From NCBI RefSeq assembly GCF_006345805.1, contig NC_043011.1, positions 45,830,464 through 45,894,463 of the forward strand: DNA of 64,000 nt, in the 5' to 3' direction. This stretch comes from Octopus sinensis (Eukaryota). This document shows positions 7,295-48,021 of the stretch, one piece after another; positions within the stretch are counted from its first letter, which is position 1; the number at the start of each line of letters is the position of its first letter. Under the pieces are notes generated by a model. The model ran no database searches, was not told where the DNA came from, and saw only the letters and a list, made by a program, of their open reading frames with translations. The position numbers and the translations under genes are program-made.

Positions 7295-7727
7295 TTCGGC
7301 CGATGCCAGCACTGCCCCGACTGGCTTCTGTGCCGGTGGCACATAAAAAGCACCATTCGAACGTGGCCGATGCCAGCGCCGCCCCGACTGGCTCCTGTGC
7401 CGGTGGCACATAAAAAGCACCATCCGAACGTTGCCAGCGCTGCCTTGGCTGGCTACCATGCCACTGGCACGTTAAAAGCTCCAACCGATCGTGGCCGATG
7501 CCGGACACACCCCCCCCTGGCGCCTGTGCAGGTGGCACGTAAAAAGCACCCACTACACTCGTGGAGTGGTTGGCGTTAGGAAGGGCATCCAGCCGTAGAA
7601 ACTCTGCCAGATCAGACTGGAGCCTGGAGCAGCCCCTGGCTTCCCAGACTCTGGTCGAACCGTCCAACTCGTGCTAGCGCGGAAAACGGACGTTAAACGA
7701 TGGTGATGATGATGATGATGATGATGA
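7295..7727 (+). mobile_element. SINE family C (GGAAGGGCATCCAGC domain, RTE-like (GAT)n tail) with tandemly repeated 5' module
   Basis: GAGTGGTTGGCGTTAGGAAGGGCATCCAGC...GGACGTTAAACGATGATG. Copies also lie at about 3250, 8695(-), 13785, 17150, 19340(-), 43420, 48606 and 58474. Confidence 0.8.
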
Positions 7728-12491: not shown

Positions 12492-13760
12492 TTGGGTTGT
12501 CTGGAAAGTTTATGCCGATTTATAGTAGCTTACCTTTCGACTTATTTTAGCACATGGTTGAGTTCATAAAATAGGTTTTGACTACACCTCCATTTAGAGC
12601 ATAGTTTAAGTTATCTTTTCGTGGAAGGTTCTTATAATCTGTGTTAATTCTGTATCCCTTTAAAATGGAAGATAAGAAAGTTCATTTTCGGCACTTGATG
12701 CTTTTCTTTTTCCGTAAAGGGAAAAATGCCTCACAAGCAACCAAAGAAATATGCACAGTTTACGGTGATGTTTCTTTATCCGAAAGAACTGTACAGAAAT
12801 GGTTTGCAAGGTTCTGGGCTGGAGATTGTAGCCTTATTGATAAAGAGTGATCATGCAGACCATTCACTACAGATGATGACCAAATCATGTCATTAATTGA
12901 GAATAACCCACATTGCACAACCTGAGAATTGGCAGTAAGCCTCAACCTATCAAAATCCGTCATTCATGAGCACCTGGTAAAGCTTGGGTACACAAATTGC
13001 TACGATGTTTGGGTACCACATGAGTTGAGTGAGAAGAACCTTTTGGGTCACATTTCCATCCGTGATTCGCTTTATAAACGGAATGAAAATGCGCCTTTTT
13101 TAAAACAAATTGTGACAGGTGATGAGAAATGGATTATCTACCGAATTGTTCAGAGAAAGCGATCCTGGAGTAAGCAACATGAGCCACCCTTAGCCACTCC
13201 AAAAGCAGGTCTTCACCTTAAAAAAGTCTTGATTTGTGTCTGGTGGGATTGGAAAGGAATTCTGTACTATGAGCTTCTCCCAAGTAACCTGACAGTTAAT
13301 TCTGAGAAATACTGTACACAACTGGATGAGTTAAAAGCAGCAATTCAAGAGAGACGTCCAGAATTGGCCAACAGGAAGGGTGTTGTTTTCCAACATGATA
13401 ATGCAAGACTGCACGTTTCTTTTGGAACCAGACAAAAATTGCTGCACCTCAGCTTGGATGTGTTACCCCACCCTCCCTATTTACCAGATATTGCTCCTTT
13501 GGATTTCCACTTATTCAGGTCTCTGCAGAATAGTCTTAATGGTAAAAGTTCCATGGATGACGTAAAAAGATACCTTGATGAATTCTCTGCCATGAGACCA
13601 CCTCAGTTCTGGGAAGAGGGTATTTTCAAGTTAAAGTAAAGATGGAGACGCATTGTGCATCAAAATGCTTCATATTTGGTTGATTAAAAATGTAATGGCA
13701 AGTATTTATTGACCTTTTCCTTTCCTTTAAGAATAGGTGTGAACTTTCCAGACAACCCAA
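12492..13760 (+). mobile_element. Full-length mariner (DD34D) DNA transposon, mellifera-subfamily-like, 1269 bp
   Basis: The TIRs are TTGGGTTGTCTGGAAAGTT (19 bp perfect, about 30 bp imperfect). The flanks are TA within (TA)n tracts. It contains a transposase reading frame. Confidence 0.95.
12665..13687 (+). pseudogene. Mariner transposase pseudogene with three in-frame stops
   Basis: MEDKKVHFRHLMLFFFRKGKNASQA...WVPHEL...GDEKW...HDNARLH...YLPDIAPLDFHLF...RWRRIVHQNASYLVD*. The stops are at 12848-50 (TGA), 12923-25 (TGA) and 13637-39 (TAA). All segments are in one frame (ORFs 12641..12850 and 12929..13639). Confidence 0.93.
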
Positions 13761-14635
13761 TATATATATATATATATATGTGTGTATGTGGCACGTAAAA
13801 GGCATCCACTACACTCTCGGAGTGGTTGGCGTTAGGAAGGGAATCCAGCTGTAGAAACTCTGCCAGATCAAGATTGGAGCCTGGTGCAGCCATCTGGTTT
13901 GCCAGACCTCAGTCAAATTGTCCAACCCATGCTAGCATGGAAAGCGGACGTTAAACGATGATGAGGATGATGATGATTTATAAATTTTTTTCAAACTTAC
14001 TTTTTATTCACCTGTAATTTTGATTAATTTGTATTGTGAATCAATATTATATATGTTTCTAAGTATTTGTGTATGCATGTGAGTTTATTTCACTTAGTTG
14101 ATGGCATGTATTTTTTCTAGTTTTCGCGAATGATAAATTCTGTTATTTCATTGTTTTACCTTTATGTAGATAATCCAGTAATTTGCACAATTCTATATTA
14201 AAATATTGCTTTATACTGAATAGAATATTAGCTAATAACTCATTTTCTATGCTAAAGTTTAAGCAAAAGTTAAATAATTTCATATCTTGTTGAATTCACC
14301 TGTATTTATGTATAATTAGATTTGTTTTGAGACAAAAATTATGCAATAGAATCGGTTAAGAACCTTTTGTTAAATTTTATTCCAAAAAATCACATTAATA
14401 TGTTGATAAACAAAAAGTTGTTTTATAAAACCCATCTAAATTCATGATTATTTTAGAATTTAATTAAAACACGTAAGGGGTGCATTTTGGTTAGAGATAT
14501 ATTAATGAGAAAGTTAAATATGTACAGATGCAGGAAGACCAGAGTTCAAAAGAGGACTAAGTACATAATTATGTAGAATGTATACTTTATTGTGATAGCA
14601 AGAGACTCTATGGAGAGCTCATCCATTTCCTGGGT

Positions 14636-14940
14636 GTTTTTCTGAACCACATCACACACCACCTGCTGGACGACGTGGTCTCAGAGAGCCAGTGTGGATT
14701 TAGGAACAACAGGGGGGCAATAGACATGGTCTTTGCAGTATGGCAGATACAAGAGAAGTGCTGAGAACAAAACCAGAACCTCTACATCCTCTTCGTGGAT
14801 CTGACGAAGGCTTTTGACACTGTCAGCCGAGAGGGCCTGTGGGATATCTTGTCTGAGCTAGGCTGCCCACCAAAGCTTGTCAGGATCATCCAGTCATTTC
14901 ACAATGGCATGATGGCTCACATCAGGGAAAACGGAGATGT
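14636..14940 (+). mobile_element. RTE-clade LINE reverse transcriptase fragment (same family as 18090-18833)
   Basis: It encodes, with a frameshift, LLDDVVSESQCGFRNNRGAIDMVFAVWQIQEK..EQNQNLYILFVDLTKAFDTVSREGLWDILSELGCPPKLVRIIQSFHNGM. It is nucleotide-similar to the reverse complement of R1+R2. Confidence 0.85.
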
Positions 14941-15010: not shown

Positions 15011-15245
15011 CAAGGCGGCGAGCTGGCAGAAACATTAGCGCGCCGGGCGAAATGCTTAGCGGTATTTCGTCTGCCACTACGTTCTGAGTTCAAATTCCGC
15101 CGAGGTCGACTTTGCCTTTCATCCTTTCGGGGTCGATAAATAAAGTACCAGTTACGCACTGGGGTCGATGTAATCGACTTAATACCTATGTCTGTCCTTG
15201 TTTGTCCCCTCTGTGTTTAGCCCCTTGTGGGTAGTAAAGAAATAT
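15011..15245 (+). mobile_element. tRNA-derived SINE family B, full-length
   Basis: AAGGCGGCGAGCTGGCAGAA...GAGTTCAAATTCCGCC...TAGCCCCTTGTGGG.AATAAAGAAATA. Copies also lie at 25439-25672(+), 26516-26754(+), 26881-27042(-), 46967-47129(+) and 47621-47849(-), with older variants at about 4075, 16760, 19075, 35490 and 53278. Confidence 0.85.
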
Positions 15246-15904
15246 ATATTAACTCATCAATTTCATGTCCTTAGTTAATATAGTAACATCTTTGAACAGG
15301 GCCTAATTCAGACAACTATGTGAAGCTGCTGGAGACTAGTCGAACCCAGGCTGGAGAGGGTTGTTGCTGGAAAGTATGATAGCAGGATTTGGCTCCTTGC
15401 CATATCTCTGAAAAGAGTCCAAAGTAGTTAGAGCATTTCTATAACTGCCAGCCCCAATTTCTAACCTCCTTATTCCTCTGATTGTAATGTCATGGATTAC
15501 TCTTTTACTCATGCTGGAGCACCGCCTTTAGTTGAGCAAAGTACTAAGAGCCTTTAGTCGAGCAAATAAATACTAGGCTTACTTTTTAAGCCTAGTACTT
15601 ACTCTATCGGTCTCATTTGCCGAACCGCTAAGTTAGGAGGATGTAAACTCACCAGCATTGGTTGTCAAGCGATGTTGGAGGACAAACAGACAGACAAACA
15701 TACACACACACACACACACACATATATGACGGGCTTCTTTCAGTTTCCGTCTACCAAATCCACTCACAAGGCTTTGGTCAGCCTGAGGCTGTAGTAGAAG
15801 ACACTTGCCCAAAGTGCCACGCAGTGCGAATGAACCTGGAACCATGTGGTTGGTAAGCAAGCTACCTACCACACAGCCACTCTTACGCTATGTGAGTAAG
15901 ACAC

Positions 15905-16148: not shown

Positions 16149-18089
16149 TATATATATATATACTCTTTTTACTCTTTTACTCTTTTACTTGTTTCAGTCA
16201 TTTGACTGCAGCCATGCTGGAGCACCGCCTTTAATCGAGCAACTCGACCCCGGGACTTATTCTTTTTTTGTAAGCCCAGTACTTATTCTATCGGTCTCTT
16301 TTGCCGAACCGCTAAGTAACAGGGACATAAACACACCAGCATCGGTTGTCAAGCAATGCTAGGGGACAAACACACACACGCATATATATATATATACATA
16401 TATACGACGGGCTTCTTTCAGTTTCCCTCTACCAAATCCACTCACAAGGCTTTGGTCAGCCGAGGCTATAGTAGAAGACACTTGCCCAAGGTGCCACGCT
16501 GTGGGACTGAACCTGGAACCATGTGGTTGGTAGACAAGCTACTTACCACACAGCCACATCTTTTATTTTGTACTCGTTTCAGTCATTAAACTGCGACCAT
16601 GCTGGGGCATTATCTTGAAGAATTTTAGTTGAACAATTTGACTCTAGAACTTAATTTTTTTTTTAAAGCCAGGTACTTATTCGATTTGTATCTTTTGCTG
16701 AACTGCTAAGTCATGGGGATGTAAACACACCAACACCAGTTGTCAAGTAGTGGTGGAGGATAAACAGAATCATTTGCATGCTAGTAAAATGCTTACCAGC
16801 ATTTCATCAGTCCTTATGTTCTGAGTCCAAATTTTAGCTGAGTTTGACTTAGCCGTCCATCCTTTTGGGGGTCAATAAAATAAGGACCAGTTGAACTGAG
16901 GTCGATGTAATCCACTTGCCTCCTTCCCCAAACTTGCTGGCCTTGTGCCAATATTTGAAACCAATATATATAAGGCCCACCCACCCACCCATATGTATAT
17001 AAGATGGGCTTCTCTCAGTTTCTGTCTATCAAATTCACTCAAGGCCTTTAGTTGACCTGTGGCTATAGTAAAATGCACTCGCCCAAAGTGCCATGTGCCT
17101 CCTTTGAGTAATTCTTAATGTCTTTGCTTCACGCCTTCATCTTTTTTTTTTTTTTGGTGGCACGTCAAAAGCATGGGTGGCACGTAAAAAGCATGGGTGG
17201 CACGTAAAAACACCAACCGATTGTGACCGTTGCCAGCCTTGCCTGGCACCTGTGCCAGTGCCACGTAAAAAGCACCTACTACACTCACGGAGTGGTTGGT
17301 GTTAGGAAGGGCATCCAGCTGTAGAAACACTGCCAGATCAGAATGGGCCTGGTACAGCCTCCTGGCTTCTCAGACCCCAGTCGAACCGTCCAACCCATAC
17401 TAGCATGGAAAACGGACGTTAAACGATGATAATGATGATGTGCTTCATTTGTTATCCCATTTATTCCTTTGATCACCATTCACTATCTATTATCCTCAAT
17501 GACTCACTGCCATGCTTCATTATTTCTTAATACATCTATCTATTGAACCAATTGTCTTTTTCCTCTCCATCAATATCTCTCTATAATAAAACTCGTTCTT
17601 CTTTACACCTTTCCTTTCTTATGCTATCTCACTCTTCCCTCCCTCTCTTTATTTCCTTTCACATTTTCCTGTCCCTCTGTGTCTTTCACAGTTCACTTGA
17701 TTCTTGGGTGGCTACTTCTATTTTCCCTATTTAAGTATCTAGCATCTGTCTATGATATTTTCTTTTCCCTTTTTACACCTCTTTCAGTGTAGCCATTCTT
17801 TTTCCTTTGAGCTCAGTATATAAAATGGACAAAATGCTGCTAAGTACTTCTCCTGGCATGCTAACAATTCTACCAGCTACTGCAGTATTTTAGAGCCAGC
17901 CTTAATATGAGGTGGTATTAAAAAGTTCTAGGAATACTCATATTTACTAAAAAATAACTTATTTACCTAAGTTTTAACATCATTAACATTACCTGAGTTT
18001 TAACATCAGCAATACACCAGTCCCAGTATTCCTGCCACCTTTGGAATCTGGTTTGGAAGTCGTTTTCCATAATCAACTCAAGGACCTTC

Positions 18090-18416
18090 CTGCAGGTCTG
18101 GTTCATTCAATGCTGCAAGCACACAATCATCTGCAAACAGGAAGTCTCTCACTACGGCGTCCAGGACCTTGGTTTTTGCCTTCAGACGTCTGAGGTCAAA
18201 GAATCGGCTGTTACATCTGTAACGAATAGTGGCACTAGCATTCAGACTTTGACAGGGTGCGGAAGAGCACGGTGGCAAATATGAGGCTGAAGAGTGTGGG
18301 AGCCATCATGCAGCCTTGCTTCATGCCATTGGAGACCGAGAATGGATCAGAGACATCTCCATTTTCCACGATGCGAACCAGCATGCCATCATGAAATGAC
18401 TGGATGAGCCTGACGA
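18090..18416 (-). mobile_element. RTE-clade LINE reverse transcriptase fragment R2
   Basis: VRLIQSFHDGMLVRIVENGDVSDPFSVSNGMKQGCMMAPTLFSLIF followed by RRLKAKTKV...FLFADDCVLAA (ORFs 18235..18684 and 18078..18278). These include the GxxQG and (F)ADD RT motifs. Confidence 0.88.
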
Positions 18417-18640
18417 TGATGTAAAAAAACAGTGGCCTTTGAGCTGCATTTTTGTCTTTGGGAAAAGATGGAAGTTTGCATGTGTGAAATCTGGTGAATA
18501 GGGTGGGTGTGGAAGTGATGCCATGTTGTTTTAGTGAGAAACTCACAAGTGAGGAGAGCTTAGTGACCGGGTGCATTATCGTCGTTAAGAATCCAATTCT
18601 TCGCACCCCACAAATCCGGTCACTCTCGCTGAATGTCTCT

Positions 18641-18833
18641 TGACGAGCTTTACTGGGCAGCCTAGCTTGGACAAGATATCCCACAGGCCCTCTCGGCTGA
18701 CAGTGTCAAAAGCGTTCGTCAGGTCCATGAAGAGGATGTAGAAGTTCTGGTTTTGTTCTCGGCACTTCTCTTGTATCTGCCATACTGCAAAGACCATGTC
18801 TATTGTCCCCCTGTTGTTCCTAAATCCACACTG
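18641..18833 (-). mobile_element. RTE-clade LINE reverse transcriptase fragment R1
   Basis: QCGFRNNRGTIDMVFAVWQIQEKCREQNQNFYILFMDLTNAFDTVSREGLWDILSKLGCPVKLV, in ORF 18585..18971. Confidence 0.88.
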
Positions 18834-20906
18834 AATGTCCCTCCAAAACATTGCAGTAAAACCCTCAATTGCTGGGCTGACCCTGAGGGACAAATTCTCG
18901 ATGCACAATACCATATTTCCAGGAGTGATGCTTGTGTCAGGTCTTCCAGATTGCTCATCATCTTCCATCATATCAAAATATCATGGAAATTAAAAAAATA
19001 ATATATATCTACATATCTTGATTTAAAATAATTTTCATGTAAGTTAGATAGCACTTTCTAACATCACTGTAATGTAAGTTGGTGAGCTGGCAGAAATGTT
19101 ACCATACTGGGCAAAATGCTGAGTGGCATTTCATCTGGCTCATTACGTTCTGTGTTCAAATTCTGCTGAGGTTGACTTTGATTTTATAAAATAAGTTGAT
19201 CTAATTGACTTACCAGCTCCCCTGAAATTATTAGACTTATGCCAAAATTTGAAATCAATATCTCTCTGATGTTTTATTTTATTGAAACAGTTAAAAATAA
19301 ATGCTAACTTAACAAATATATCTAATGAAATATAAGTGAGTTTCAACATCGTCCCTTAACATGTTTTCCAAGCTGGCATGGGTTGGACGGTTTGACCAGA
19401 GCTGGCGAGCAGGAGATCCGCATCAATTGGCTTGGTTTCTATAGCTAGATGCCCTTCTCAATACTGATCACTTTACATTGCGTGCTGGGTGATTTTATTG
19501 TGCCACTGGCATGTTAGTGTAAACACTGGTATAATAAATGTTATAATCTTAGTTTGAGTCATTTATTTGGCTTTATTATACTTTAAATTTTTATTGCAAC
19601 AATTTTTCTAATAATTTTTTTTTAAAACTATATTATGTTAAAAATTCTATAAGTATATCAGACATAAAAGATTGAAATCTGACCCATGATATTACTTATC
19701 TTTAGCACCTGAGCTAGGTTTTCTGATGACAATAGCTCAGCATATGTCTAACTTACCAACATCACCTGAGCATTCAATAATCTATATCCTTTTGTTGTCT
19801 CCTTTCATGTAGATATAATGCAAGTAAAATAAGTTTAATGTTCAACAACAATTGCTGCAGCAGCAGCAGTACCAGAGACATGGTACCAGCAGCCAGTCCT
19901 GTGTTGTTTGTCAACTCACAGCAAGGAAGCAAGATATTTTCCAGGTATAAAATAAATGTTAAGACAGTGTTAACAGTAAGAAGAGATTTGTTTAGCACTT
20001 GTTTTATTGATCTGTCTGCTTTCCAAACAAGTGGAGCTATTAGTTCTACAGACATCAAGTTTTTATTTAGCCATTCAATTTAAGAAAGGATATTGGGAAT
20101 GAACAAAATCATAATAATAATAATAATAATAATGATAAAAATAAAAATAATACAATCGAATCGATTAGCCATGCCAAATGAATTTGTCTGATAAATGAGG
20201 TTTGATCTGTTTTTACAATAGCTCTGAATGAGCATTACTTGCCTAGCAGTAGAAAACATCTGAGGAGACACTAAAGAGAGAGGAGAGGGTGGATAAGTTG
20301 GTTGTTATGGTGAGTGTTGAGGCAATTACTTGAATAGACTTCACAGTCTTAATTGTCCCAATCTTGAAGATGCTTAACTGAATTTCAATAGAATTTTATC
20401 TATAGCTGGCAGATTTCTTCCCATATTTTATTTGTGAAATTAAAAATATCCAGCATTTAATTCACATGCATAAGGACAGACATTTTCTTTTTGCACTGAT
20501 TGTATTGTTTCCCATCAATATGAGAAGCTTCTTGGATACATTATCCATATTTATGAGACCAATAACAGTTGTTCACCTACTTTTGATAAACTTCATTGTC
20601 TTATAAGTTCTTTTATGACACGTTGTCTGAGTATACTACAGGAGCCAGAACATAGATTCATGCTGGCCATCAGTGTCTTTATTTAGCATAGCCATCACAT
20701 GCAAGTGACAGCCACTAGCAAAAGCATGGTAGTAAGTACAATATTTGCACTAATTGTTTCAGGTGCTTATGTAGTTTCAGGAGACATAGCCAAACTTTTT
20801 GGCCCAGCCGCACTTGATCTTGGGCAGAACATTATGCCCGGGGTAACATGTTCTGAACAATCTAAAAACAATGGACATGGTTGGAAAGTGAAATTTTAAC
20901 AACAAA

Positions 20907-23900
20907 GCCAGCCAGGTCAGGCCAGGTCAACCAAGCCAGGCCAGGCCAGCCAGCCAGGCAAGCCCAGGACCGGCCAGGGCCAGCCTAGGCCAGTGCCGGG
21001 GCAAAGCCGGGGCAGCAAGGCATCCAAAACTGGGCCAGTCAGCCAGCCTAGGCCAGTTTCCAGCCAGCAATTCAAATCTGGGCCAGCCTGGCAGCCAAGA
21101 CCTGGCTAGCCAGCCAGCCTAAGCCAGTTTCCAGCCAGCAAAACAAAGCCGGGGCAGCCAAGGGGCGGGCAGCCAGCCAGCCAGCCATGGCTTGCGTCAG
21201 CCACTCACCCAAGCCTGGACCAGCCAGCCAGCCAGCCAGCTTAGGGCAGTTTCAAGCCAGCAAGCCAAGACCGGGCCAGCCAGGCATCCAAAACTGGGCC
21301 AGCCAGCCAGCCAGCCTAGGTCAGTTTCCAGCCAGCAAGCCAAATCCGGGACAGCCTGTCAGCCAAGGCCCAGCCAGCAAGCTAGCCTACGTCAGTTTCC
21401 AGCCAGCAAGCCAAATCCGGGCCATCCTGGCAGCCAAGGCCCAGCCAGCAAGCCAAGGCGGGGCCAGCCAGGCTGCCAAAAAGCATCCAGGCAGCCAGCC
21501 TAGGACAATTTCCAGCCAGCAAACCAAGGATGGGCCAGCCAGCCAAGGCCAGAGCCAACCAGCCAGCAATTCAAGGCCGGGCCAACAAGGCAAACAAAGG
21601 CGTGCCAGCCAGGCAACCTAGGCCAGTTTCCAGTTAGCAAGCCAAGGGCGGGCCAGTCAGGCAGCCAGGCGAATGCTGGACCAGCCAGGCAGCCAACATG
21701 CAGCCAGGAAACCAAGGCTGGGCAAGCCATGCAGCCAGCCATCCTAAGGACATCCAGCCAGCCAGCCTAGGCCTGTTTCCAGCTAGCAAACTAAGGCCAG
21801 ACCAGCCAAGCAGCCAAGGCCCAGCCAGCCTAGGCAAGTTTCCGGGCAGCCAGCCAAGGCCATTTACCAGCCAGCAAACCAAGGTTGGACTAGCCAAGCA
21901 TCCAAGGGACGGCCAGCCAGCTAGCCTAGTCCAGTTTCCAGCCAGCAAGCCAAGAGCGGGCCAGCCAGGCATCCAAGGCCCAGCCAGCCAGCAAGACCAG
22001 GCAGTTTGCTGCCAGCCAACCAAGTCCGGGCCAGCCAGGCAGCCAAGGCCCAGCCAGGCAGCCAAGGCCCAGCCAGGCAGCCAAGGCCCAGCCAGGCAGC
22101 CAAGGCCCAGCCAGCTGAGGCCAGTTTCCAGCCAGCAAACCATGGCCGGTTCAGCCAAGCAGCCAAGAACTGGCCAGCCAGCCAGTCTAGGCCAGTTTCC
22201 AGCCAGCAAACCTTGGCCGGGCCAGTCAGGTGACCATGGACCAGCCCGCCAGTTTCCAGCTAGTAAACCAAGGCTGGACCAGCCAACCAGCCAAGGACTG
22301 GCCAGCCAGCCAGCCTAGATCAGTTTCCAACCAGGAAGCCAAGGCCGGGCCAGCCAGCCAGGCTAGGCCAGTTTCCAACCAGTAAACTAAGGCCGGACCT
22401 ACCAAGCAGCCAAGGCCAGGCCAGCCAGCCAAGGCCACTTTCCAGCCAGCAAACCAAGGCCATGACAGCAAGCCTAGGCCAGTTTCCAGCCAGCAAGCCA
22501 TGAGCGGGCCTGCCAGACACCCAAGGATCTGCCAGCCAGCCAGTCGAGGTGAGTTTTCAGGCAGCAAATCAAGGCCGGGCATGCCAGGCAGCCAAGTCCC
22601 ATCCAGCCAGCAAGCTAAGGCCAGTTTTCAGGCAGTCAAGGCCTGGCCAGCCAGGCAGCCAACATGCAGCCAGCCAGCCAGTCTAGGCCAGTTTCCAGCC
22701 AGGAAACCAAGGCTGGGCAAGCCAGGCAGCCAGCTAGGCATCCAAGGATCAGCCAGCCAGCCCAGGCAGTTTCCAGCCTGCAAACCAAGTCCGGGCCAGT
22801 GAAGCAGCGAAGGCCCAGCCAGCCAGCCAGTCTGGGCAAGTTTCAGCCAGCAAGCCAAAGCCGGGCCACCCAGGCAGCCAAGACCTGCCTATCCAGCCAG
22901 CCAGGTGCGAGGACCATGCAGCCAGCTAGTCTTGGCCAGTTTCCAGCCAGCAAGCCTAGGCCATGCCAGACAGGCGGCGAAGGATCGGCCAGCCAGCCAA
23001 AGCCAGTTTCCAGCTAGTAAACCAAGGCCGGACCAGCCAAGCAGCCAAGGACTGGCTAGCCAGCCAGCCTAGGCCAGTTTCCAGCCATGAAGACAAAGCC
23101 GGGCCAGCTAGGTAGCCAAGTATCAGCCAGCCTTAGCTAGTTTCAAGCCAGCAATCCAAGACTGGGCCAGCCAGGCAGCCAAGGATCATCCAGCCAGCCA
23201 GCCAGCCAAGGCGAGTTTTCAGGCAGCACACCAAAGCTGGGCAAGGCAGCAAGCTAAGGCCAGTTTTCAGCCAGCAAACCAAGGCCTGGCCAGCCAGCCA
23301 GCAAACCTACGCCGTTCCAGCCAGGCAGCCAAGTACCAGCCAGCCAGCCTAGGCTAGTTTTCAGCCAGCAAATAAGGCCCGGCCAGCCAGGCAGCCAAGG
23401 ACCGTGTAGCCTGGCCAACCTAGGCCAGTTTACAGCCGGCGAACCAAGGTCGGGCCAGCCAACTTAGGCCAGTTTCCAGCCAGGAAGCCAAGGCCGGGCC
23501 AGCCAGGCATCCAAGGCCAGAGCCAGCCAGCAAGCCAAAGCCCAGGCAGCCAAAACCTGGCCAGCCAGCCAGCCTAAGCCAGTTTCAAGCCAGCAAGCCA
23601 AGGCCGGGCCAGCCAGCCAAGCGTGGGTCAACCTGGCTGCCAAGGACCATCCAGTCAGCCAGTCTAGGCCAGTTTCCAGCCAGCAAACCTAGGCTGGGCC
23701 AGACAGGGGGCCAAGGACTGGCCAACCAGCCAGCCAAAGCCAGTTTCCAGCTAGTAAACCAAGGCCGGACCAGCCAAGCAGCCAAGGCCTGGCTACCCAG
23801 TCAGCCTAGATCAGTTTCCAGCCAGGAAGCCATGAGCGGGCCAGCCAGGCAGCCAAGGATCAACCAGCCAGCCAGCCTTAGCCAGTTTCAAGCCAGGAAT

Positions 23901-24593
23901 CCAAGGCCGGGCCAGCTAGGCAGCCAGCCAGCCAGCCAGCCAGCCTTAGCTAATTTCAAGCCAGCAATCCAAGGCTGGGCCAGCCAGGCAGACGGCGAAT
24001 GACCATCCAGCCAGGCAGCCGTGGAACGTCCAGCCAGCTAGCCTAGGCCAGTTTCCAACCAGCAAACTAAGGCTGGACCAGCCAAGCAGCCAAGGCCTGG
24101 CCACCCAGCCAGCCTAGGCCAGTTTCCAGCCAGCAAGCCATGAGTGGGCCAGCCAGGCAGCCAAGGGTTGTTCAGCCAGCCAGCAAGCTAACGCCAGCCA
24201 GCCAGCCTAGGCCAGTTTCTAGCCAGTAAACCAAGGCTGGGCCCAACAGGCAGCCAGGGCCTGGCCAGCTAGCCACCCTAGACAAGTTTCCTGCTAGCAA
24301 GCCAAGTGTGGGCCAGCCAGGCAGCCGTGGAACGTCCAGCCAGCCAGCCTAGAATAGTTTCCAGCCAGCAAACTAAGGCTGGATCAGCCAAGCAACCATG
24401 GCCCAGCCAGCCAGCCTATGCCAGTTTCCAGCCAGCAAACTAAAGCCAGGGCAGCCAAGGCCCGGTCAGCCAGCCAAGGCCAGTTTCAAGCCAGCAAGCC
24501 AAATCTGGGCCAGTCCAGCCAGCCAGCTAACTTATGCCAGTTTCCAGCCAGCAAGCCAAGGTCGGGCCAGCCAGGCAACCAAGAACCATCCAT

Positions 24594-24632
<39 letters not shown>

Positions 24633-25343
24633 AGTACCGTCCAGCCAGCCTAGGCCAGTTTGCAGAGACCAAACCAAGGCTGGGCCAGCCAACCTAGGCC
24701 AGTTTCCAGCCAGCAAGCCAAGTGCGGGCCAGCTAGGCATCCAAGGACCGGCCAGCTGGCCACTCTCAGCCAGTTTCTAGCCAGCAAACCAAGGCTGGTC
24801 CAGCCAAGCAGCCAAGGCCTGGCCAGCCAGCCAGACCAGGCCAGTTTCGAACCAGCCAGCCTGGCAGCCAAGGACGGTCCAGCCAGCCAGCCTAGGCCAG
24901 TTTCCAGCCAGCAAACCTAGGCCGGGCCAGACTGGTGGCTAATCACCGGCCAGCCAGTAAACTAAGGCCGGAGCAGCCAAGTAGCCAAGGACCGTCCAGC
25001 CAACCAGCCTATGCCAGTTTGCAGTCAGGCAGCCCAGGCCTGCCCAGCCAGCCAGCCAGCCTATGCCAGCATGCCAAGGCCAGGCCAGCCAGCTAGCCCA
25101 GGACCTTCCAGCTAGCCAGCCAAGGGCCGGCCAGTCAGCCAAGCCAGGACCAGCCAGGCAGCCTAGGTCAGTTTCCAGCCTGGTAGCCAAGGCTGGGCCA
25201 ACCAGCCAGCCAGCCTAGGCCAATTTCCAGCCAATAAGGAAAGGCAGAGCCAGCCAGGCACCCTAAGTTCGGCCATCCAGCTAGCCTAGGCCAGTTTGTA
25301 GCCAGCCCTGGTCATGGCTGGCTGGCTGGCCCTGGCCTTGGTT
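20907..25343. repeat. GC-rich degenerate tandem array, unit about 70 bp built from CCAG/CCAAGG/CCTAGG modules
   Basis: The anchor GGCCAGTTTCCAGCCAGCAA recurs roughly 55 times (hand count), with spacing often 68-73 bp. The + strand is very T-poor and the edges against AT-rich DNA are sharp. Confidence 0.92.
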
Positions 25344-28300
25344 GAGCATTGGGGTCAAGTTAATCTCCCCTAAAATTTCTGTCCTTGTACCAAAGTTTGA
25401 CACTTATGTTAATCTCAATGGTATATAGATTTTATAGCTAAGGCGGCGAGCTGGCAGAAACATTAGCACGCTGGGCGAAATGCATAGCCGTATTTCGTCT
25501 GCCGTTACATTCTGAGTTCAAATTCCGCTGAGGTTGACTTTGCCTTTCATCCTTTCGGGGTCGATAAATTAAGTACCAGTTATGCACTGGGGTCGATGTA
25601 ATCGACTTAATCCGTTTGTCTGTCCTTGTTTGTCCTCTCTGTGTTTAGTCCCTTGTGGGCAGTAAAGAAATAGGTATATAGATTTTGTGTGAAACTAGTT
25701 TTGATTGTTATCATCCTATAAGCATATATACTAAATCTTAGTCCAATTATTATATTATTCATAGGCTTGGAAACAAGAGGTGCAGTGGGGGTGCAAACAC
25801 ACCCCTTGAAATTTTTGTTGGGCAGTGAAAACACTTTGAGCACTATCCTGAAAAACTGGGTTTGCACACACTAAACAAATTTCGTTCTTGCATTTATAAC
25901 AAGTATATGTTTATTTCCTCTGAAGCAAACTCAAAATTTTAATGAAACCCACCCATGGTTAATCATATCTATATAAATGCTGTTGGCATAAGAGAGAGAG
26001 AGAAGATTGGCTATGTAGTTTTATTAATAAAATGCTGAAAGATCAGCTTGTAACCTTGAAGCTTTAATCTGCTTCGTCATTGATATAGTGTTCACCTTTC
26101 CATGATGGCATGGATTAGCTTGATCAATTTAGCAGCTGTTTAGCATTATGTAACAGAGATTATCTTACTGATACTTCCTAGAGAATAGACTAGATTATAT
26201 AGCAGAACACACACACACACAAACACACACATACATTTTCTCTCTCTCTTTCATATTTGAAGACACGCAAACTTAGGTAGAGTTTCTGATGTTTTCTCGT
26301 ACAGGTATATTGATACATGTACATACATGTTCCCACATGTTCCATTCACAATATGCATATTCATGGGCACTCTCGTGTCCACATGCATACAGATTATTAT
26401 ATGCACTGGTGCACATAGGCACAGGTGTGGCTTTGTGGTAAGACGTTTGCTTCCTAGCAACATGGTTCTGGGTCCAGTCCCACTGCATGGCATCTCAAGC
26501 AAGTGTCTTCTACTAAAAGGCGGTGAGCTGGCAGAAATGTTAGTACACTGGGTGAAATGCTTGCGGTATTTCATCTGTCTTTACGTTTTGAGTTCAAATT
26601 CCGCCGAGGTCAACTTTGCCTTTCATTCTTTTGGAGGCGATAAATTAAGTACCAGTCAATGTAATTGACTTAATCCCTTTGTCTGTCAATGTAATCGACT
26701 TAATCCCTTTGTCTGTCCCCTCTGTGTGTAGCCCCTTGTGGGCAATAAAGAAATAAGTGTCTTCTACTATAGACTCAAGGTGACCAAAGCTTTGTGGATT
26801 ACTTTGGTAGATGGAAACTGAAAGAAGCCTGTGTGTATGTGTGTGTGTCTTTTTGACTGTGTTTGACCCCCCATCCTCACTCTTTATTGCCCACAAGGGG
26901 CTAAACATAGAGGGGACAAACAAGGACAAATAAAGGGATTAAGTCGATTACATCGACCCTAGTGCGTAACTGGTACTTAATTTATCGACCCCGAAAGGAT
27001 GAAAGGCAAAGTCGACATCAGCAGAATTTAAACTCAGAACGTAACATAATGGCAATGAGTTTTGGTGTGTTGAAGTTCACATAACTTAGCAGTCTGGCAA
27101 AAGAGATTGATATAATAAGTATCAAAAAATTCTTCAGGATAGTGCCTATTAGTCTAATAATGACTGAGACAAATAAAAGAAGATAAATTCACACATTCTT
27201 GTATACAAACACATTTATATACAATTCTTTATATACTTTCTTTCTTGAAGTATATGTATGTGTTTACACAAATGCATGTACACACATCTATGTGCATAAA
27301 TTTGGGTGAAAATATTGCACATATTTGCAAAAGAGTTTTCAATTCAATAATAAATTCAAAGAAATCAATAAATTGTACCATATTTACACATGCCCATCAG
27401 ATGCATTAGTAAACGTATATGCAAACCTGCAGTTCCAAACGCCCATGTTCGTTTACAATTCTAAATTCTTACCTACTTACATAGATACAGACACTTTTGT
27501 AAATGCATGTATATGCACACATTCAAACTTTCACACAGGTTTATGTTTATATCTGTACAAGGCCGATATATAAAAATGCTATCAATGATAGCAGTGTCTG
27601 TCAGTTTAAAGAACAGAATTGTTTATAGATTTCATTGTAGATTAAACAAAAATGTTACTCTAAAAGTTGGAATAATCTTATTTTACATGTTTGGCTCTGA
27701 GACTTAAACAGGGCGTTTATTTTTTTTTTTTTAAATGCTAACATCTATAATTTGTATCATTCTGTAGTGAATGGATATTGATCAGCACAGCTATTATCCC
27801 ACGGAGAACTTACACATGAAATCAATAATCTTGTTTTGGATGTTAATTCTCTTGGAATATTTTCTAACTCCATTGTAGCTTATATTTCCTCCACTCCCTA
27901 GACCTTAATTCTGCTTTTTGTCATTCTTTCATGTCTCATTCATTCAACTCAGTTATGAAAACCAAGTTAAAAGAAATGATCTATATTACATGTTTAATAA
28001 TTCTGTCATTTGAAAACCTGTTGTAGACCATACAAGATGATGCCAATAATCAATGCATTAATACTAGTGGCATTTTTTTTTTTTGCCTTTCTTATTTTGG
28101 TTTTTTCTTCTCTTGTATATTTTCTTCATGAAAATGCGTGGTGGGGCATGTAAAATTTTTCTCAGTGTTGGATAGTTTTCCTTTTGTCCACGATTTTTCA
28201 ATACATATTTTGTCTATAGTTGCTGTGTGCAAGTTATTGTGAAGCAGTTGCCTAGCAACTAACAAAATAGATGTTTGCTCACCATTTTTCTTTCTTGTTT

Positions 28301-31537: not shown

Positions 31538-31830
31538 TATCTATCCATCCATCCATCCATCCATCCCTCTATCTATCTATCTATCTATCCATCTATCTAG
31601 CTATCTATCCATCCATCTATCTATCTGTATATCTATCTATCCATCTATCTAGCTATCTATCTATTTAGCTATCTATCCATCTATCTATCTGTCTATCCAT
31701 CTATCTATCTATCTATCTATAGACATCTATATATCTATCCATCTATCTATCTATACAAATATAGACATCTATCTATCTATCTATCTATCTATACACATCT
31801 ATATCTGCCTATCTACACATATATATATAT
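31538..31830. repeat. (TCTA/TCCA)n compound microsatellite
   Basis: Direct reading. Confidence 0.95.
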
Positions 31831-33620: not shown

Positions 33621-34790
33621 AAAAAAAAAGAAAAAGATTATATCTCATTACCAAATATTTCTAAATAGGACAAGCTCTTCCTATTTCAGCCATCCATCCT
33701 ACGTTGTACAATACCTACCATAGAAAATGTTCTTCTTTTACCAGTGAATATATAATCTTGCATATAGGATACTAATAGAATAGAAACTGTCAATGGTGAG
33801 AACAGATGCTCAGTAAAGTTGTGTTTGTTAATACGTCACCTGACATGAAATGTCTGGTGGAGACAAAAGTTAGTTGCTATTTTATTCTATGTCAACTAAT
33901 TAACAACTTAATCCAATATATTTATTATACAAATATATAACATTAAAGTAATGAGCAGAAACAGTAAAGAAATAAAACAAAACTCAATCATGTACTATTA
34001 GAATTTCTGTTTATTTATATATATAATACGCACACAGACACAAACACGTGTGTATATGCATGTGTGTGTTTATATATGTGCTCCACACAATACACTCTAC
34101 ATGCAGTCGATAAAGAAAGAATGGAAGACTCTACAGGATTGTGAAAACAAGCAAAGAGTAGCAGGCCTTCACACAGAATTTTATTCTCTTTAGTAAATAA
34201 TGTTTCAGGGCCAAGTTCCAAGGTTAACACTGAGGTCAAGGCAAACAGTCAAATAATGAAAATGCAATGACACACTCCTTAGTAGCTTCTAGATAAACAC
34301 TGATGTTGATTCACATAAGGACATTTTTTTTTTTTCTTTTATATTAATCGAGGCACTGAACTGCATAGCTTGTTCAGAAAAATAAGTCACGTCTCTAAAA
34401 ATGAAACGATCTTCTATGTTGAAAACATATCTCCATACCACTTGAATGTAAATGTCTATATATTTCACAATCAGCAAAAATATAGAGTTTATAACATAAC
34501 AGTATCTTTGTCTTCACTATCGCTTCTTTCTTTCTTTCTCTTCATCTCTAGTTCTTGGATGCTCCTCAGACATATAAGTTTATGGATCTTTATTCTATAG
34601 AATATTACTATCATTTTGTCTGTCTACATTTGTATCAATAAATAATACATGTACACGCATATACATATGTATTTATAAATTTTATATATATATATATATA
34701 TTTATAAATTTTTAATATATATGTGTGTATTTATAAATATATTTATACTTTTAAATACATATATATAAGCGAAATATATACACTTATATA

Positions 34791-34837
<47 letters not shown>

Positions 34838-39474: not shown

Positions 39475-39652
39475 TCGTTTTCAGGAAAATTACATGATGA
39501 ATCTATGTGTCAATACTAACTTTTATGACTGAGTTTCCTGTGTGTGCCTATATATATATAAATATATATATATATTATATATATTATATGTATGTATATA
39601 TATTTATATATATTAATATGTATGTATATATATATATATATATATTAATATG

Positions 39653-39688
<36 letters not shown>

Positions 39689-40380
39689 TATGTATGTATA
39701 TATATATATATATTAATATGTATGTAATATAATTAGATACAGCATAAACATATATGAAATATATGTATATATTTAATGTGTTTATATATACTATAATATA
39801 TATATTTGTGTATGTAAATATACACACACATATACACCCACACACTATATTCTTCTTTAGTAAGTAATAGTTTCTTTTAGAGGACAAAATAAATATTGCA
39901 AAAATTAAAGAGAATGAATGTTATTTTTCTTTCATATTTTTTTCTTTTTTTTTTTTTTCATTTTGTTGTGGTCACTTCGTGAAATGGAAATTAGAATTGA
40001 GTTATTTTGCTGTGATATACAGTAGTGATGTATATATAGGATTTCATGAAACTTTTTTTTTTTTTTTGCCAGCTCATGTCGTTTTATTTCTTTCTGAAGT
40101 CTTCCATCTCTCTTTCTCTTTGTTTGTCTTCTTTTTTTTTTCTTTTGCATATATTTTATGCTTTCTTTGCATAAATCTTTGATATTCCACCACTTCAATC
40201 TGTAGGAAGATATTTCCCTGTTTCATTATTATAATGTTCTGTGCATATTGTTCCCCAAAAATATTTTGAGAACATTTAATTAAATGTATTTACATGTCTG
40301 AATAATTTAAAAGAAAAGACTGCAACATGAGATTTTCATTATTGGTGTTTGGTTTTATGTACATTTTATGCTGGAATTTG

Positions 40381-40428
40381 TCAAAGAACTGTATCAAATA
40401 TGGCCATGCCTTTGGTGATGTTTTCATC
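40381..40428 (-). CDS. KCNIP: KChIP/KCNIP-like terminal coding exon (DENITKGMAIFDTVL*)
   Basis: ctttctttaacag|GAT GAA AAC ATC...GTT CTT TGA. This resembles the KChIP4 C-terminal H10 helix DENIMRSMQLFENVI*, with the same 48-nt length. Confidence 0.9.
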   Translation of the reverse strand, partial: DENITKGMAIFDTVL

Positions 40429-41388: not shown

Positions 41389-41452
<64 letters not shown>

Positions 41453-41917
41453 TATATATATATATATATGATATTTATATATATATAATATTTATATATA
41501 TATATATATGATATTTATATATATATGATATTTATATATATATAATATTTATATATAAAATATTTATATATATAATATATATGATATATATATATAATAT
41601 ATATATATGATATATATATATATATATATATATGATATATAATATATATATGATATATATAATATATATATGATATATATATATAATATATATATACAAT
41701 ATATATATAATAATATATATATATATACGATATATATATATATATATATATATATGATATATATATATATAATATTTATATATATGATATATATATATAA
41801 TATTTATACATATAATATATATATAATATATGAATATATAATATATGAATATATAATGTATATATATTATATAGATATATATAATATATAGATATATAAT
41901 ATATATATATATATATT
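41381..41917. repeat. (CT)n-(TA)n compound microsatellite, about 540 bp, in the last KCNIP intron
   Basis: Direct reading. Similar TA/TG arrays lie at 403-690, 34660-34833, 39420-39830 and 59455-59565. Confidence 0.95.
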
Positions 41918-46600: not shown

Positions 46601-48021
46601 AACCGCTGATCAATAAAATGCTGTTGTGTATTGTAACCCACCTCTCTCTCTTCTATTCACATGTGCATTTCCAACATAGATGCTGGAAATGCATCTATAT
46701 AGGTATTTCCCTTATGGAGAAATAGATATGGAGAAAAAATGGTATTTCCTCTACCACATGTTATGCCTGGAACTTATGGAATAAAACATCTTGGTTCATG
46801 CTGTAAAGTGGTTGGTGATAGGAATGTTATCCAATAGTAGATATCATGCCATAAAATGGAAGGCATGAATGGAGGACATGTAGGCTGCATAGCTTCATTT
46901 ATTCGCAGGGCAGGGGACTCAGCTGGAAGAACAACTCTAAAAAGAAAACCTAGCCCATGCCATCTGGTTCTGAGTTCAAATTCTGCTGAGGTCGACTTTG
47001 CCTTTCATCCTTTTGGGGTCGATAAATTAAGTACCAGTTATGCACTAGGGTCGATATAATCGACTTCACCCCTTTGTCTCATTGTTTGTCCCCTCTATGT
47101 TTAGCCCCTTGTGGGCAATAAAGAAATAAGTCACTCTGTCTATGCTATGAAGTGGTGGGTGATGGAAATGACATTTAGTCATTAAAAATAAAAAAACATG
47201 GCATACACAAGTGGCTAGTTTTCTATATTTGCCAAAAGTTGATTGTAGTGGGCTTTGAATTCAAAATGTAAAATATGTAGCTACATTCTTAGGGGTAGTA
47301 CATTGTATTCAGCTTTACATATGATTGTGTGAACATCAGTTAACAAGTGCAAATGTATTATCAATGCTGCAGAGACGTGGTTCCTCAGATGAATACTAAA
47401 AGTGTCTTTTTAGGTACAGACAGTGACCAGCATCAAATTTCTTAGATAGTATAGACCACCAGAAAGCTTCTTAACAACATTAGAAACAACAGGCTAAGTT
47501 AATTTGATATCATATACAAAGACAAAACCTGGAGCACATAGAGACACCCATGAGACTGGAAGAAAGCAAGAAGACAGAGAGAAAAAAAAAGATACTTGAT
47601 GGCCAGCCTTACCACCTGTGTCTTTACTACCCACGAGGGGCTAAACACAGAGGGGACAAACAAGGACAGACAAATGGATTAAGTTGATTATATTGACCCC
47701 AGTGCGTAACTGGTATTTAATTTATCGACCCCGAAAGGATGAAAGGCAAAGTCGACCTCGGCGGAATTTGAACTCAGAACATAACGGCAGACGAAATACG
47801 GCTGCGCATTTCGTCCGGCGTGCTACCGATTCTGCCAGCTCGCCACCTTCAGGAAGACCAAACCAATAATGTTGAATGTGAGAGAGGAAATGGTTGAGTT
47901 CCTCTATAACTATTGCCTGTGAGTACAGAACCAGAAAGAATTTTTTTTTTTGCTTTTTTTTTTGTGTTACATATTTGTTTACTTTCTTACTGCTGCAAAT
48001 AACTCATAAATGGATACTTAC

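What the first reader, a model, noticed from the sequence alone, without database searches (positions are those of the whole stretch)
20907..25312. 4.4-kb GC-rich, strand-asymmetric array with a unit of about 70 bp and modular internal shuffling
In an otherwise very AT-rich window this block is mostly C, A and G on the + strand. T is nearly confined to the GTTT anchor and CCTAGG. The approximate unit is CCTAGG-CCAGTTT-CCAGCCAG-CAAA-CCAAGG-CCGGG-CCAGCCAGG-CAGCCAAGG-ACTGG-(CCAG)n, with about 55 copies. Modules are skipped, repeated or swapped rather than uniformly diverged, and there are dense short palindromes (CCWWGG, GGCC). The minus strand is G-rich (GGCT)n, which could form two-tier G-quadruplexes or R-loops, loosely analogous to immunoglobulin switch regions. 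It lies about 15 kb downstream of KCNIP with the G-rich strand in the gene's sense. I cannot match it to any named satellite or transposon. It may be a dispersed minisatellite family, a mobile element's internal array or a chromatin or recombination element.
Basis: partly seen in the sequence, partly recalled or inferred. Interest (0 to 1): 0.72.

Follow-up and report, generated by a model that had tools for sequence, protein, structure and literature searches.

The report
Old, decayed 71-bp GC-rich minisatellite
A 4.4-kb non-coding tandem array of about 62 decayed 71-bp units, each made of three CCAG-based sub-repeats of about 23 bp, lies 15 kb past the end of a KChIP ion-channel-partner gene in an AT-rich animal genome; it looks like an ordinary old minisatellite, not a gene, a recognisable mobile element or a special DNA-structure element.

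Summary
The array is real, at 20899/20907-25312, followed by a 35-nt inverted tail to 25344. It has 62.5% G+C against 34% in the rest of the window, and T is 10.8%. The dominant period is 71 bp. All 40 anchor matches lie inside it on the + strand (0.01 expected by chance).

The 71-mer is itself three related sub-repeats: A (25 bp), B (23 bp) and C (23 bp), each ending in CCWAGG and built on CCAG. A segmentation places 97% of the array in these modules. 28% of module transitions are out of order, against 0-5% in simulated arrays that diverge by point changes only. So the "modular shuffling" is real. I explain it as out-of-register slippage or unequal exchange between paralogous sub-repeats.

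Units are old (mean 75% pairwise identity) and CpG-depleted (observed/expected 0.17, with the consensus CpG split CG/TG/CA 10/10/8). The array is non-coding.

Side claims that fail:
- Palindromes are not enriched.
- There is no G3 quadruplex motif on either strand.
- GC skew is only about -0.12.
- Single-strand DNA folds are no better than shuffles.

I found no terminal inverted repeats, no target-site duplication and no other copy in the window. No relative turned up in the prokaryotic, viral or metagenomic collections. Whether the family is dispersed in the source genome could not be tested.

Verdict: a new member of a known kind, of low interest.

The parts
20899..25312 (+). Main tandem array. 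It holds about 62 unit-equivalents of a 71-bp unit made of A (CCAGTTTCCAGCCAGCAAACCAAGG), B (CTGGGCCAGCCAGGCAGCCAAGG) and C (ACTGGCCAGCCAGCCAGCCTAGG). The parse finds 66 A, 69 B and 55 C modules.
   Evidence: TRF period 71. Anchor statistics. The Viterbi parse covers 4365 of 4481 nt. The unit profile gives 70 + strand hits.
20907..20993 (+). Degenerate left edge that looks like a (GCCAG)/(CCAG)n microsatellite. It has no GTTT anchor and is the most diverged part of the array.
   Evidence: TRF gives period 5 with 18 copies at 69% matches. Identity to the module consensus is 0.79 at the ends and 0.82-0.85 inside.
22031..22114 (+). Perfect 19-bp x 4.4 duplication of a shortened B module (CCAGCCAGGCAGCCAAGGC). 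This is evidence of recent slippage inside an otherwise old array.
   Evidence: TRF gives 100% matches and no indels. The parse shows a BBBB run.
24586..24632 (+). Nearly pure (CCAG)n tract of 11.8 copies. It is the tetranucleotide core on which all three modules are built.
   Evidence: TRF gives period 4 at 97% matches. There are 28 runs of (CCAG)>=3 inside the array and none outside.
25310..25344 (-). Short inverted copy of part of the unit at the right end (…TGGCTGGCTGGCTGGCCCTGGCCTTGG).
   Evidence: Inverted-repeat pairs I8-I25 all share this arm. It is the only minus-strand profile hit (E 0.012). The hairpin it forms with the last unit is not better than shuffles (z -1.3).

Best explanation
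This is a non-coding, old, G+C-rich minisatellite, with no evidence of any function.

Shown:
- The array has nested periodicities of 4 bp (CCAG), 19/23-25 bp (modules A, B, C) and 71 bp (ABC).
- Whole modules are skipped or duplicated far more often than point divergence can mimic.
- Short perfect tracts show that slippage still occurs.
- The array ends are more diverged than the interior.
- Units are about 75% identical to each other, with no decay over distance.
- CpG is strongly depleted, with equal TG and CA derivatives at the one consensus CpG.

Inferred:
- The array grew from a (CCAG)n-type microsatellite seed. That seed duplicated into a unit of about 23 bp, then into a three-module 71-bp unit, which was then amplified.
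- It has since been remodelled by replication slippage and unequal sister-chromatid or homologue exchange. These can pair out of register because A, B and C are paralogous (B and C share 20 of 23 positions).
- The array has decayed under point mutation, including methyl-CpG deamination.
- It most likely has no sequence-specific function. Its G+C richness and A-over-T asymmetry are inherited from the CCAG seed rather than selected.
For: - Period and anchor statistics.
- Lags 23, 19 and 48 stand 5-7 sd above background. They are not multiples of 4, so they are not echoes of the CCAG period.
- Module alignments: B/C identical at 20 of 23 positions, A/B at 17 of 25.
- The parse covers 97% of the array. 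134 of 186 transitions are canonical and 28% are non-canonical (BA 15, BB 14, AC 10, CC 6, AA 4, CB 3). Simulated arrays diverging only by point changes give 0-5% at 13-18% substitution and 6-15% at 22%.
- A perfect 19-bp x 4.4 tract and a (CCAG)~12 tract.
- Ends 0.78-0.79 identical to consensus, interior 0.82-0.85. 29 full units have mean pairwise identity 0.751, with Spearman rho against distance of -0.08 (p 0.12).
- CpG observed/expected 0.17 against 0.38 in the rest of the window; AAGGC[CG/TG/CA]G splits 10/10/8.
- G>A and C>T are the commonest changes, 97 each.
- Non-coding: 71 is not a multiple of 3. Array ORFs have no Pfam domain and no homologues on either strand.
- No RNA family matches.
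- No other copy in the window. No target-site duplication or terminal inverted repeats.
Against: - Neutrality is an inference from absence. I could test no expression, methylation, population or cross-species data.
- Module A (the GTTT anchor) is slightly better conserved (0.85) than B (0.815) and C (0.80). This could reflect a bound motif, or simply fewer slippage-prone CCAG runs.
- 62% G+C persisting in a 34% G+C genome despite about 25% divergence between units may need a maintaining force such as GC-biased gene conversion.
- A transcript of the minus strand would fold better than shuffles (RNA z -3.4).
- Copy number in the source genome is unknown.
Confidence: 0.75

Rival explanations
1. 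The array is one locus of a dispersed, lineage-specific satellite or minisatellite family with many arrays across the genome. It could have spread by segmental exchange, extrachromosomal circles or mobile-element carriage. This is compatible with the anatomy described above but differs on origin and copy number.
For: Cephalopod repeat surveys set aside simple and unknown repeats, so such families would have gone undescribed. Dispersed short satellite-like arrays are common in molluscs. The unit is complex enough (71 bp with a distinctive anchor) to be a family consensus.
Against: No solitary unit, partial unit or second array occurs in the other 59.6 kb of the window, even with a sensitive profile. 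No array-derived ORF appears in 5.8 billion or 1.84 billion predicted proteins. The exact anchor gives only single chance matches in the metagenome, prokaryote and viral collections. None of these collections samples the source genome well, so this counts for little.
Confidence: 0.15
2. The array is the internal tandem-repeat region of a mobile element. It could be an over-expanded core-repeat array of a Helentron/pearl/DTC84-type non-autonomous element, or 5' monomers of the LINE whose RT fragment lies at 18.1-19.0 kb on the minus strand.
For: The array has a microsatellite-like tract at one end (20907-20993) and a short inverted piece at the other (25310-25344). LINE RT fragments (Pfam RVT_1) lie 1.9 kb to the left, with their 5' side facing the array. 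Mollusc mobile elements often carry satellite-like arrays.
Against: There is no target-site duplication: the longest direct match between the flanks is 6 nt, and it is not at the junctions. There are no conserved flanking modules or terminal inverted repeats. The inverted piece is array sequence itself, and its hairpin is not significant. Described elements carry 1-5 core repeats, not about 62, and a separate terminal ACGG-type microsatellite. A SINE-like segment at about 19.08-19.18 kb and about 1.7 kb of unique sequence lie between the RT fragment and the array.
Confidence: 0.07
3. The array is a functional structure-forming or protein-binding element: an R-loop or two-tetrad G-quadruplex zone, a recombination hotspot, a transcription pause or termination zone, or a chromatin boundary downstream of KChIP, loosely like immunoglobulin switch regions.
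For: There are 33 two-tetrad G2 motifs on the minus strand and none on the plus strand. The G-richer strand is the KChIP sense strand. A minus-strand RNA would fold with z -3.4. Module A is slightly better conserved.
Against: There is no G3 quadruplex motif on either strand, and GGG runs favour the opposite strand (56 against 29). GC skew is only about 0.12. DNA folds do not differ from shuffles. Palindromes are not enriched. CpG observed/expected is 0.17, which is unlike an unmethylated regulatory island. The array is 15 kb beyond the stop codon. Units have drifted to 75% identity with frequent module loss, which is not what a constrained binding array shows.
Confidence: 0.04
4. The array is an assembly artefact or a contaminant.
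For: Tandem arrays are prone to collapse or expansion in assemblies. The composition changes abruptly at both edges.
Against: The window has no N. Both junctions run into host-type sequence, and a SINE-like repeat present 11 times in the window starts 95 nt from the right edge. Units are individually distinct, with no internal pair of at least 110 bp at 88% identity or more, so ordinary reads can be placed uniquely. The motif forms no array in the prokaryotic, viral or metagenomic collections.
Confidence: 0.03

Closest known systems
Classical G+C-rich minisatellites (VNTRs) of vertebrates, for example the human hypervariable loci studied by Jeffreys and by Vergnaud (from my own knowledge, not tested here)
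   Same: The unit falls in the 10-100 bp range. The head-to-tail array is kilobases long at a euchromatic, gene-adjacent site. G+C content is well above the surrounding DNA. The strands differ in composition. Variant repeats are interspersed along the array, and it evolves by slippage, unequal exchange or conversion.
   Different: There are no G-runs or quadruplex motifs. The asymmetry is A over T rather than purine over pyrimidine. The sub-repeat hierarchy is clear (4, 23, 71 bp). Units are far more diverged (75%). Length polymorphism and association with recombination hotspots are unknown. The host is an AT-rich animal genome whose species I could not determine.
Hierarchically built satellites, such as mouse major satellite, whose 234-bp unit traces back to shorter sub-repeats, and alpha-satellite higher-order repeats (from my own knowledge)
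   Same: There are nested periodicities from successive rounds of duplication. Register shifts between paralogous sub-repeats produce length variants. The array edges are more diverged than the interior.
   Different: It is a single 4.4-kb array, not megabase-scale heterochromatin. It shows no homogenisation and no convincing order above 71 bp: blocks of about 745 bp are 0.69-0.71 identical against 0.67-0.69 in shifted controls.
Tandem-repeat-containing non-autonomous elements of molluscs and insects (pearl, DTC84, DINE-1, Helentron-borne Cg170; PMC3879986, PMC7492417)
   Same: These are satellite-like tandem repeats at gene-adjacent euchromatic sites, associated with a tetranucleotide microsatellite motif.
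   Different: Those elements have 1-5 core repeats, a separate microsatellite at one end, conserved left and right flanks with inverted repeats, and an AA target-site duplication. Here there are about 62 units, the tetranucleotide is embedded in every module, and no conserved flanks, terminal inverted repeats or target-site duplication are seen.
Immunoglobulin class-switch regions
   Same: They are kilobase-scale, degenerate, strand-asymmetric tandem repeats of short G/C-rich motifs.
   Different: Switch regions have dense G-clusters on the non-template strand, high GC skew, and germline promoters that drive transcription through them. This array has no G3-run quadruplex motifs, a skew of about 0.12, more GGG runs on the opposite strand, and no evidence of transcription.

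Membership tests
Minisatellite (VNTR) | Head-to-tail tandem array with a unit of roughly 10-100 bp | tested here: met
   The period is 71 bp with sub-periods of 19/23/25 bp. All anchors lie on one strand.
Minisatellite (VNTR) | Array length of about 0.5-30 kb at a discrete locus | tested here: met
   The array is 4.4 kb and bounded by unique sequence on both sides.
Minisatellite (VNTR) | Interspersed variant repeats, and indels of whole repeats or sub-repeats | tested here: met
   28% of module transitions are non-canonical, against 0-5% in the point-mutation null.
Minisatellite (VNTR) | Length polymorphism between individuals | not testable with these tools
   No reads or second assembly of the source species were available. 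Exact look-ups of the flank and array ORFs found nothing.
Satellite DNA family | Many arrays or a high genomic copy number with homogenised monomers | tested here: inconclusive
   There is one array in 64 kb, monomers are only 75% identical and show no local homogenisation. Genome-wide copy number could not be tested.
TE-borne tandem-repeat element (pearl/DTC84/Helentron type) | Conserved flanking modules with terminal or subterminal inverted repeats, and a target-site duplication | tested here: not met
   There is no target-site duplication at the junctions. The only inverted repeat is a 35-nt copy of array sequence.
TE-borne tandem-repeat element (pearl/DTC84/Helentron type) | Short core array (usually up to 5-6 repeats) followed by a distinct tetranucleotide microsatellite | tested here: not met
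   There are about 62 units, and CCAG is embedded in every module rather than appended.
G-quadruplex-forming minisatellite or switch-region-like R-loop element | Clusters of G3 or longer runs (canonical G4 motifs) and strong GC skew on one strand | tested here: not met
   There are no G3 motifs on either strand, GC skew is about 0.12, and GGG runs number 56 on the + strand against 29 on the - strand. Only 33 two-tetrad motifs exist on the minus strand.
CpG island | G+C above 50-55% with CpG observed/expected of at least 0.6 | tested here: not met
   G+C is 62.5% but CpG observed/expected is 0.17.
Protein-coding repeat | Period a multiple of 3, an open frame, and homologues or domains | tested here: not met
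   The period is 71. ORFs occur on both strands and in all frames. There are no Pfam hits and no homologues.
Structured RNA family | Match to an Rfam covariance model at the gathering score | tested here: not met
   There are no gathering-level matches in the window, and only noise (E 0.26-0.99, far below gathering scores) in 20500-25800.

The most novel reading that the evidence does not exclude
The array is one member of an undescribed, lineage-specific family of G+C-rich, CCAG-based minisatellites. GC-biased gene conversion at recombination-active sites keeps them G+C-rich in a 34% G+C genome. Alternatively, or in addition, read-through transcription from KChIP makes CUGG-rich hairpin RNA from it, giving it a role in recombination or in RNA or chromatin regulation.
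Probability: 0.07. Interest if true: 0.5.

Novelty: new member of a known kind. Interest (0 to 1): 0.15.

Why it matters
It matters little by itself. It is a clean worked example of how a complex 71-bp minisatellite unit can be built from a tetranucleotide seed through nested duplication. It also shows how paralogous sub-repeats allow out-of-register exchange that looks like "module shuffling".

It could serve as a marker: a distinctive long VNTR next to a neuronal gene. It is also a reminder that repeat surveys which drop simple and unknown repeats leave such arrays uncatalogued.

It would matter more only if genome-wide data showed a dispersed family tied to recombination, methylation or transcription.

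Tried and rejected
1. Coding repeat: rejected. The period is 71, there is no Pfam domain, and neither strand's ORF has a homologue. The single hit, P0099, is an unrelated repeat-rich adhesin-like protein at 32% identity.

2. Finding related arrays through spurious ORFs, or through the flank ORF at 20699-20899, in public assemblies: nothing is on record.

3. Exact-anchor scans of the metagenome, prokaryote-genome and viral collections returned 48, 36 and 1 loci. All are single 18-mer matches, as chance predicts (about 17 expected in genome contigs under uniform composition). No locus has more than 3 loose anchor matches.

4. Higher-order repeat above 71 bp: a unit subtype recurs at spacings of about 722-754 bp, but block identity barely exceeds shifted controls. 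I do not accept it as a higher-order repeat.

5. Terminal hairpin or foldback at the right end: not significant.

6. Palindrome enrichment, canonical G4 and DNA secondary structure: none exceeds its null.

7. Target-site duplication or terminal inverted repeats: none.

8. Orthologous locus: one distant KChIP orthologue contig (L086) conserves only the exons. It has no comparable array within 6.7 kb 3' of the last exon. It is too diverged to be informative.

9. Organism: not determined. The abundance of a SINE-like repeat would fit an octopod, given the literature. That rests on my recollection of such sequences and is not a tested result.

10. Literature searches for the motif and for cephalopod or mollusc minisatellites found no description of this repeat.
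Full report

Yes. Between about 20900 and 25312 the + strand changes abruptly. The window's usual composition is A/C/G/T 32/17/17/34%; inside the block it is 26.6/35.2/27.3/10.8%. That is 62.5% G+C against 34%.

Tandem Repeats Finder reports many overlapping rows of period 71 across 21002-25257, plus rows of period 4, 19, 23, 25, 44 and 48. Base-by-base autocorrelation peaks at lag 71 (0.46), 4 (0.45), 23 (0.395), 19 (0.385), 67/75 (0.37) and 48 (0.365). The background is 0.281 +/- 0.017.

CCAGTTTCCAGCCAGCAA with up to 2 mismatches occurs 40 times, always on the + strand and always inside the block, with 0.01 expected by chance. A looser 16-mer gives 54 copies whose commonest spacing is 71. 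A profile built from 29 complete units finds 71 hits, all inside the block. 70 are on the + strand and one is on the - strand at 25310-25343. That last hit is a short inverted copy of unit sequence, which extends the feature to 25344.

The window contains no N.

**2.

"About 55 copies of about 70 bp" is fair: the array is 62 unit-equivalents long.

"T nearly confined to GTTT and CCTAGG" is only partly true. 209 of 476 T (44%) lie in those contexts. The consensus also carries T in two CTGG sites, and C>T substitutions add the rest.

"Dense short palindromes" is not supported. There are 67 six-base palindromes against 69 +/- 8 in composition-matched shuffles. The commonest CCWWGG form, CCAAGG, is not a palindrome.

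"Minus strand G-rich" is modest: 35% G against 27% C. The strong asymmetry is A over T.

The KChIP context is correct. EF-hand exons lie on the minus strand. The 48.1-kb exon finds KChIP-named relatives at up to 91% identity. A distant orthologue contig aligns to four exons, at about 52.0, 48.1, 45.5 and 40.4 kb. The last exon reads DENITKGMAIFDTVL* and ends near 40381. So the array is 15 kb 3' of the stop codon, and its G-richer strand is the gene's sense strand.

**3. Anatomy**

The 71-mer consensus is CCAGTTTCCAGCCAGCAAACCAAGG | CTGGGCCAGCCAGGCAGCCAAGG | ACTGGCCAGCCAGCCAGCCTAGG. It is three related sub-repeats:
- A is 25 bp.
- B is 23 bp.
- C is 23 bp.

B and C are identical at 20 of 23 positions, and A and B at 17 of 25. 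All three consist of CCAG-type tetramers closed by CCWAGG. Lags 19 and 23 are not multiples of 4, so this level is not an echo of the tetranucleotide period.

A Viterbi-style segmentation into A, B, C or "junk" assigns 4365 of 4481 nt to modules (66 A, 69 B, 55 C). 134 of 186 adjacent transitions follow A>B>C>A. The other 28% are BA (15), BB (14), AC (10), CC (6), AA (4) and CB (3).

To test whether these are only misclassified diverged modules, I simulated perfect (ABC)62 arrays and mutated them with point substitutions and 1-4-nt indels only. Non-canonical transitions were 0-5% at 13-18% substitution and 6-15% at 22%. The observed substitution rate against consensus is 12.7%. So whole modules really are skipped and duplicated. 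That explains the spread of anchor spacings: 25, 44, 48, 67, 71, 75, 94 and about 119.

**4. Age and dynamics**

The 29 complete units are on average 75% identical pairwise (range 65-94%), with no decline over distance (rho -0.08, p 0.12). Identity to consensus is lower at both ends (0.78-0.79) than in the interior (0.82-0.85). That is the usual pattern when exchange renews the interior but not the edges.

No internal pair of at least 110 bp reaches 88% identity. One unit subtype recurs at spacings of about 722-754 bp, but blocks of about 745 bp align at 0.69-0.71 against 0.67-0.69 for shifted controls. I therefore do not accept an order above 71 bp.

A perfect 19-bp x 4.4 tract (22031-22114) and a (CCAG)~12 tract (24586-24632) show that small-scale slippage is still active.

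CpG is strongly depleted, with observed/expected 0.17 against 0.38 in the rest of the window. The single consensus CpG (AAGGC-CG-G) is split CG/TG/CA 10/10/8. G>A and C>T are the commonest changes, at 97 each, so there is no strand bias in them. This fits methyl-CpG decay. Despite its G+C content, the block is not a CpG island.

**5. What it is not**

*Not coding.* The period is not a multiple of 3. ORFs occur on both strands simply because stop codons are rare. The ORFs have no Pfam domain. A word-indexed search of 5.8 billion proteins found no homologue of the + strand ORF. An exhaustive phmmer search of 1.84 billion representatives with the - strand ORF gave one hit, P0099, an unrelated repeat-rich adhesin-like protein at 32% identity.

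*Not a known RNA.* There are no gathering-level Rfam matches and no tRNA.

*Not a recognisable mobile element.*
- There is no target-site duplication.
- There are no terminal inverted repeats apart from the 35-nt inverted piece of array sequence, whose hairpin is no better than shuffles (z -1.3).
- No solitary units occur elsewhere in the window.
- The left flank (19400-20906) is unique. The right flank is unique for 95 nt and then enters a SINE-like repeat of about 240 bp that has 11 hits in the window.
- LINE RT fragments (RVT_1) lie at 18.1-19.0 kb. A SINE-like segment and 1.7 kb of unique DNA separate them from the array.
- The mollusc and insect elements that carry tandem repeats have 1-5 core repeats, one terminal microsatellite, flanks with inverted repeats and an AA target-site duplication (PMC3879986). 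None of these features was found here.

*Not a contaminant.* The exact anchor occurs only as single matches in the metagenome (48 loci), prokaryote-genome (36) and viral (1) collections. No locus shows more than three loose anchor matches.

**6. Structural and functional ideas**

There is no G3-run quadruplex motif on either strand. GGG runs are commoner on the + strand (56) than on the - strand (29). Only 33 two-tetrad motifs exist on the minus strand.

A 300-nt sample folded as single-stranded DNA gives -62 kcal/mol (minus strand, z -1.4) and -52 kcal/mol (plus strand, z -0.8). Neither differs from dinucleotide shuffles.

As RNA, the minus-strand version folds better than shuffles (z -3.4), because CUGG repeats pair through G-U. 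The plus-strand version does not (z -1.4). This matters only if KChIP transcription reads 15 kb past its stop codon, which I could not test.

The switch-region, R-loop and G4 analogy is therefore weak.

**7. Best explanation**

This is an old, non-coding, G+C-rich minisatellite. I infer that it grew from a (CCAG)n seed by nested duplication (4, then about 23, then 71 bp). It was then amplified to about 60 units. It has been remodelled by out-of-register slippage or unequal exchange between paralogous modules, and it has decayed by point mutation, including CpG loss. It most likely has no sequence-specific function.

The anatomy, the rearrangement excess, the age and the CpG pattern are shown. 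The seed origin, the exchange mechanism, germline methylation and neutrality are inferred.

**8. Limits**

I could not determine the source species. Published surveys say SINE expansion is octopod-specific among cephalopods, and that simple and unknown repeats are usually discarded. That would fit an octopod origin for this SINE-rich window and would explain why the repeat has no name. I did not test this.

I could not search the source genome, so whether the family is dispersed or private to this locus remains open. So do length polymorphism, methylation, transcription and orthology.

Literature searches for the motif and for cephalopod or mollusc minisatellites returned nothing that describes it.

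**9. Verdict**

It is a new member of a known kind, of low interest unless genome-wide data reveal a dispersed or functional family.

Noticed in passing
window 25440-25680 (also 15012-15249, 47614-47849, 26881-27045, 46968-47131 and weaker copies): A dispersed SINE-like repeat of about 240 bp has 11 BLAST hits in the 64-kb window at 70-92% identity. One copy starts 95 nt from the array's right edge. ARAGORN and Rfam do not call it a tRNA.
   Followed up: partly
window 7298-7550, 17156-17210 and 48706-49041: A second, unrelated tandem structure has a 67-bp unit x 3.9 copies (…GGTGGCACATAAAAAGCACC…). Related pieces occur at two other sites, and their spurious ORFs share the peptide DALPNANHS-SVVGAFYVPPA. 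It is probably part of another dispersed element that tends to form short internal arrays.
   Followed up: no
window 12929-13639 (+): A mariner-type transposase remnant: a 236-aa ORF matching Pfam Transposase_1 at E 9e-26.
   Followed up: partly
window 18081-18980 (-) and 14561-14761 (+): Frameshifted LINE reverse-transcriptase fragments (Pfam RVT_1). A short piece carrying the same peptide motif (QCGFRNNRG-IDMVFAVWQIQEKC) lies in the opposite orientation 4 kb away.
   Followed up: partly
window about 52044-51966, 48247-48026, 45589-45503 and 40431-40381 (-): Four 3' exons of a KChIP (Kv channel-interacting protein) gene are spread over about 12 kb. The orthologue contig L086 packs the same four exons into about 10.8 kb, and its last three exons span 3.6 kb against about 7.9 kb here, with no intron similarity.
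   Followed up: partly
window 41412-41916, 39549-39822, 403-690, 34659-34834 and 31538-31792: Very long (TA)n tracts of up to about 500 bp and a 255-bp (TATC)n tract. The 41-42 kb bin falls to 18.5% G+C, just 3' of the last KChIP exon.
   Followed up: no
L086 8048-9338: In the distant KChIP orthologue contig (ENA ERZ26168041), a well-homogenised 145-bp satellite (8.9 copies, 96% identity) sits in the intron just upstream of the EF-hand exon. It is unrelated in sequence to the window's array.
   Followed up: no
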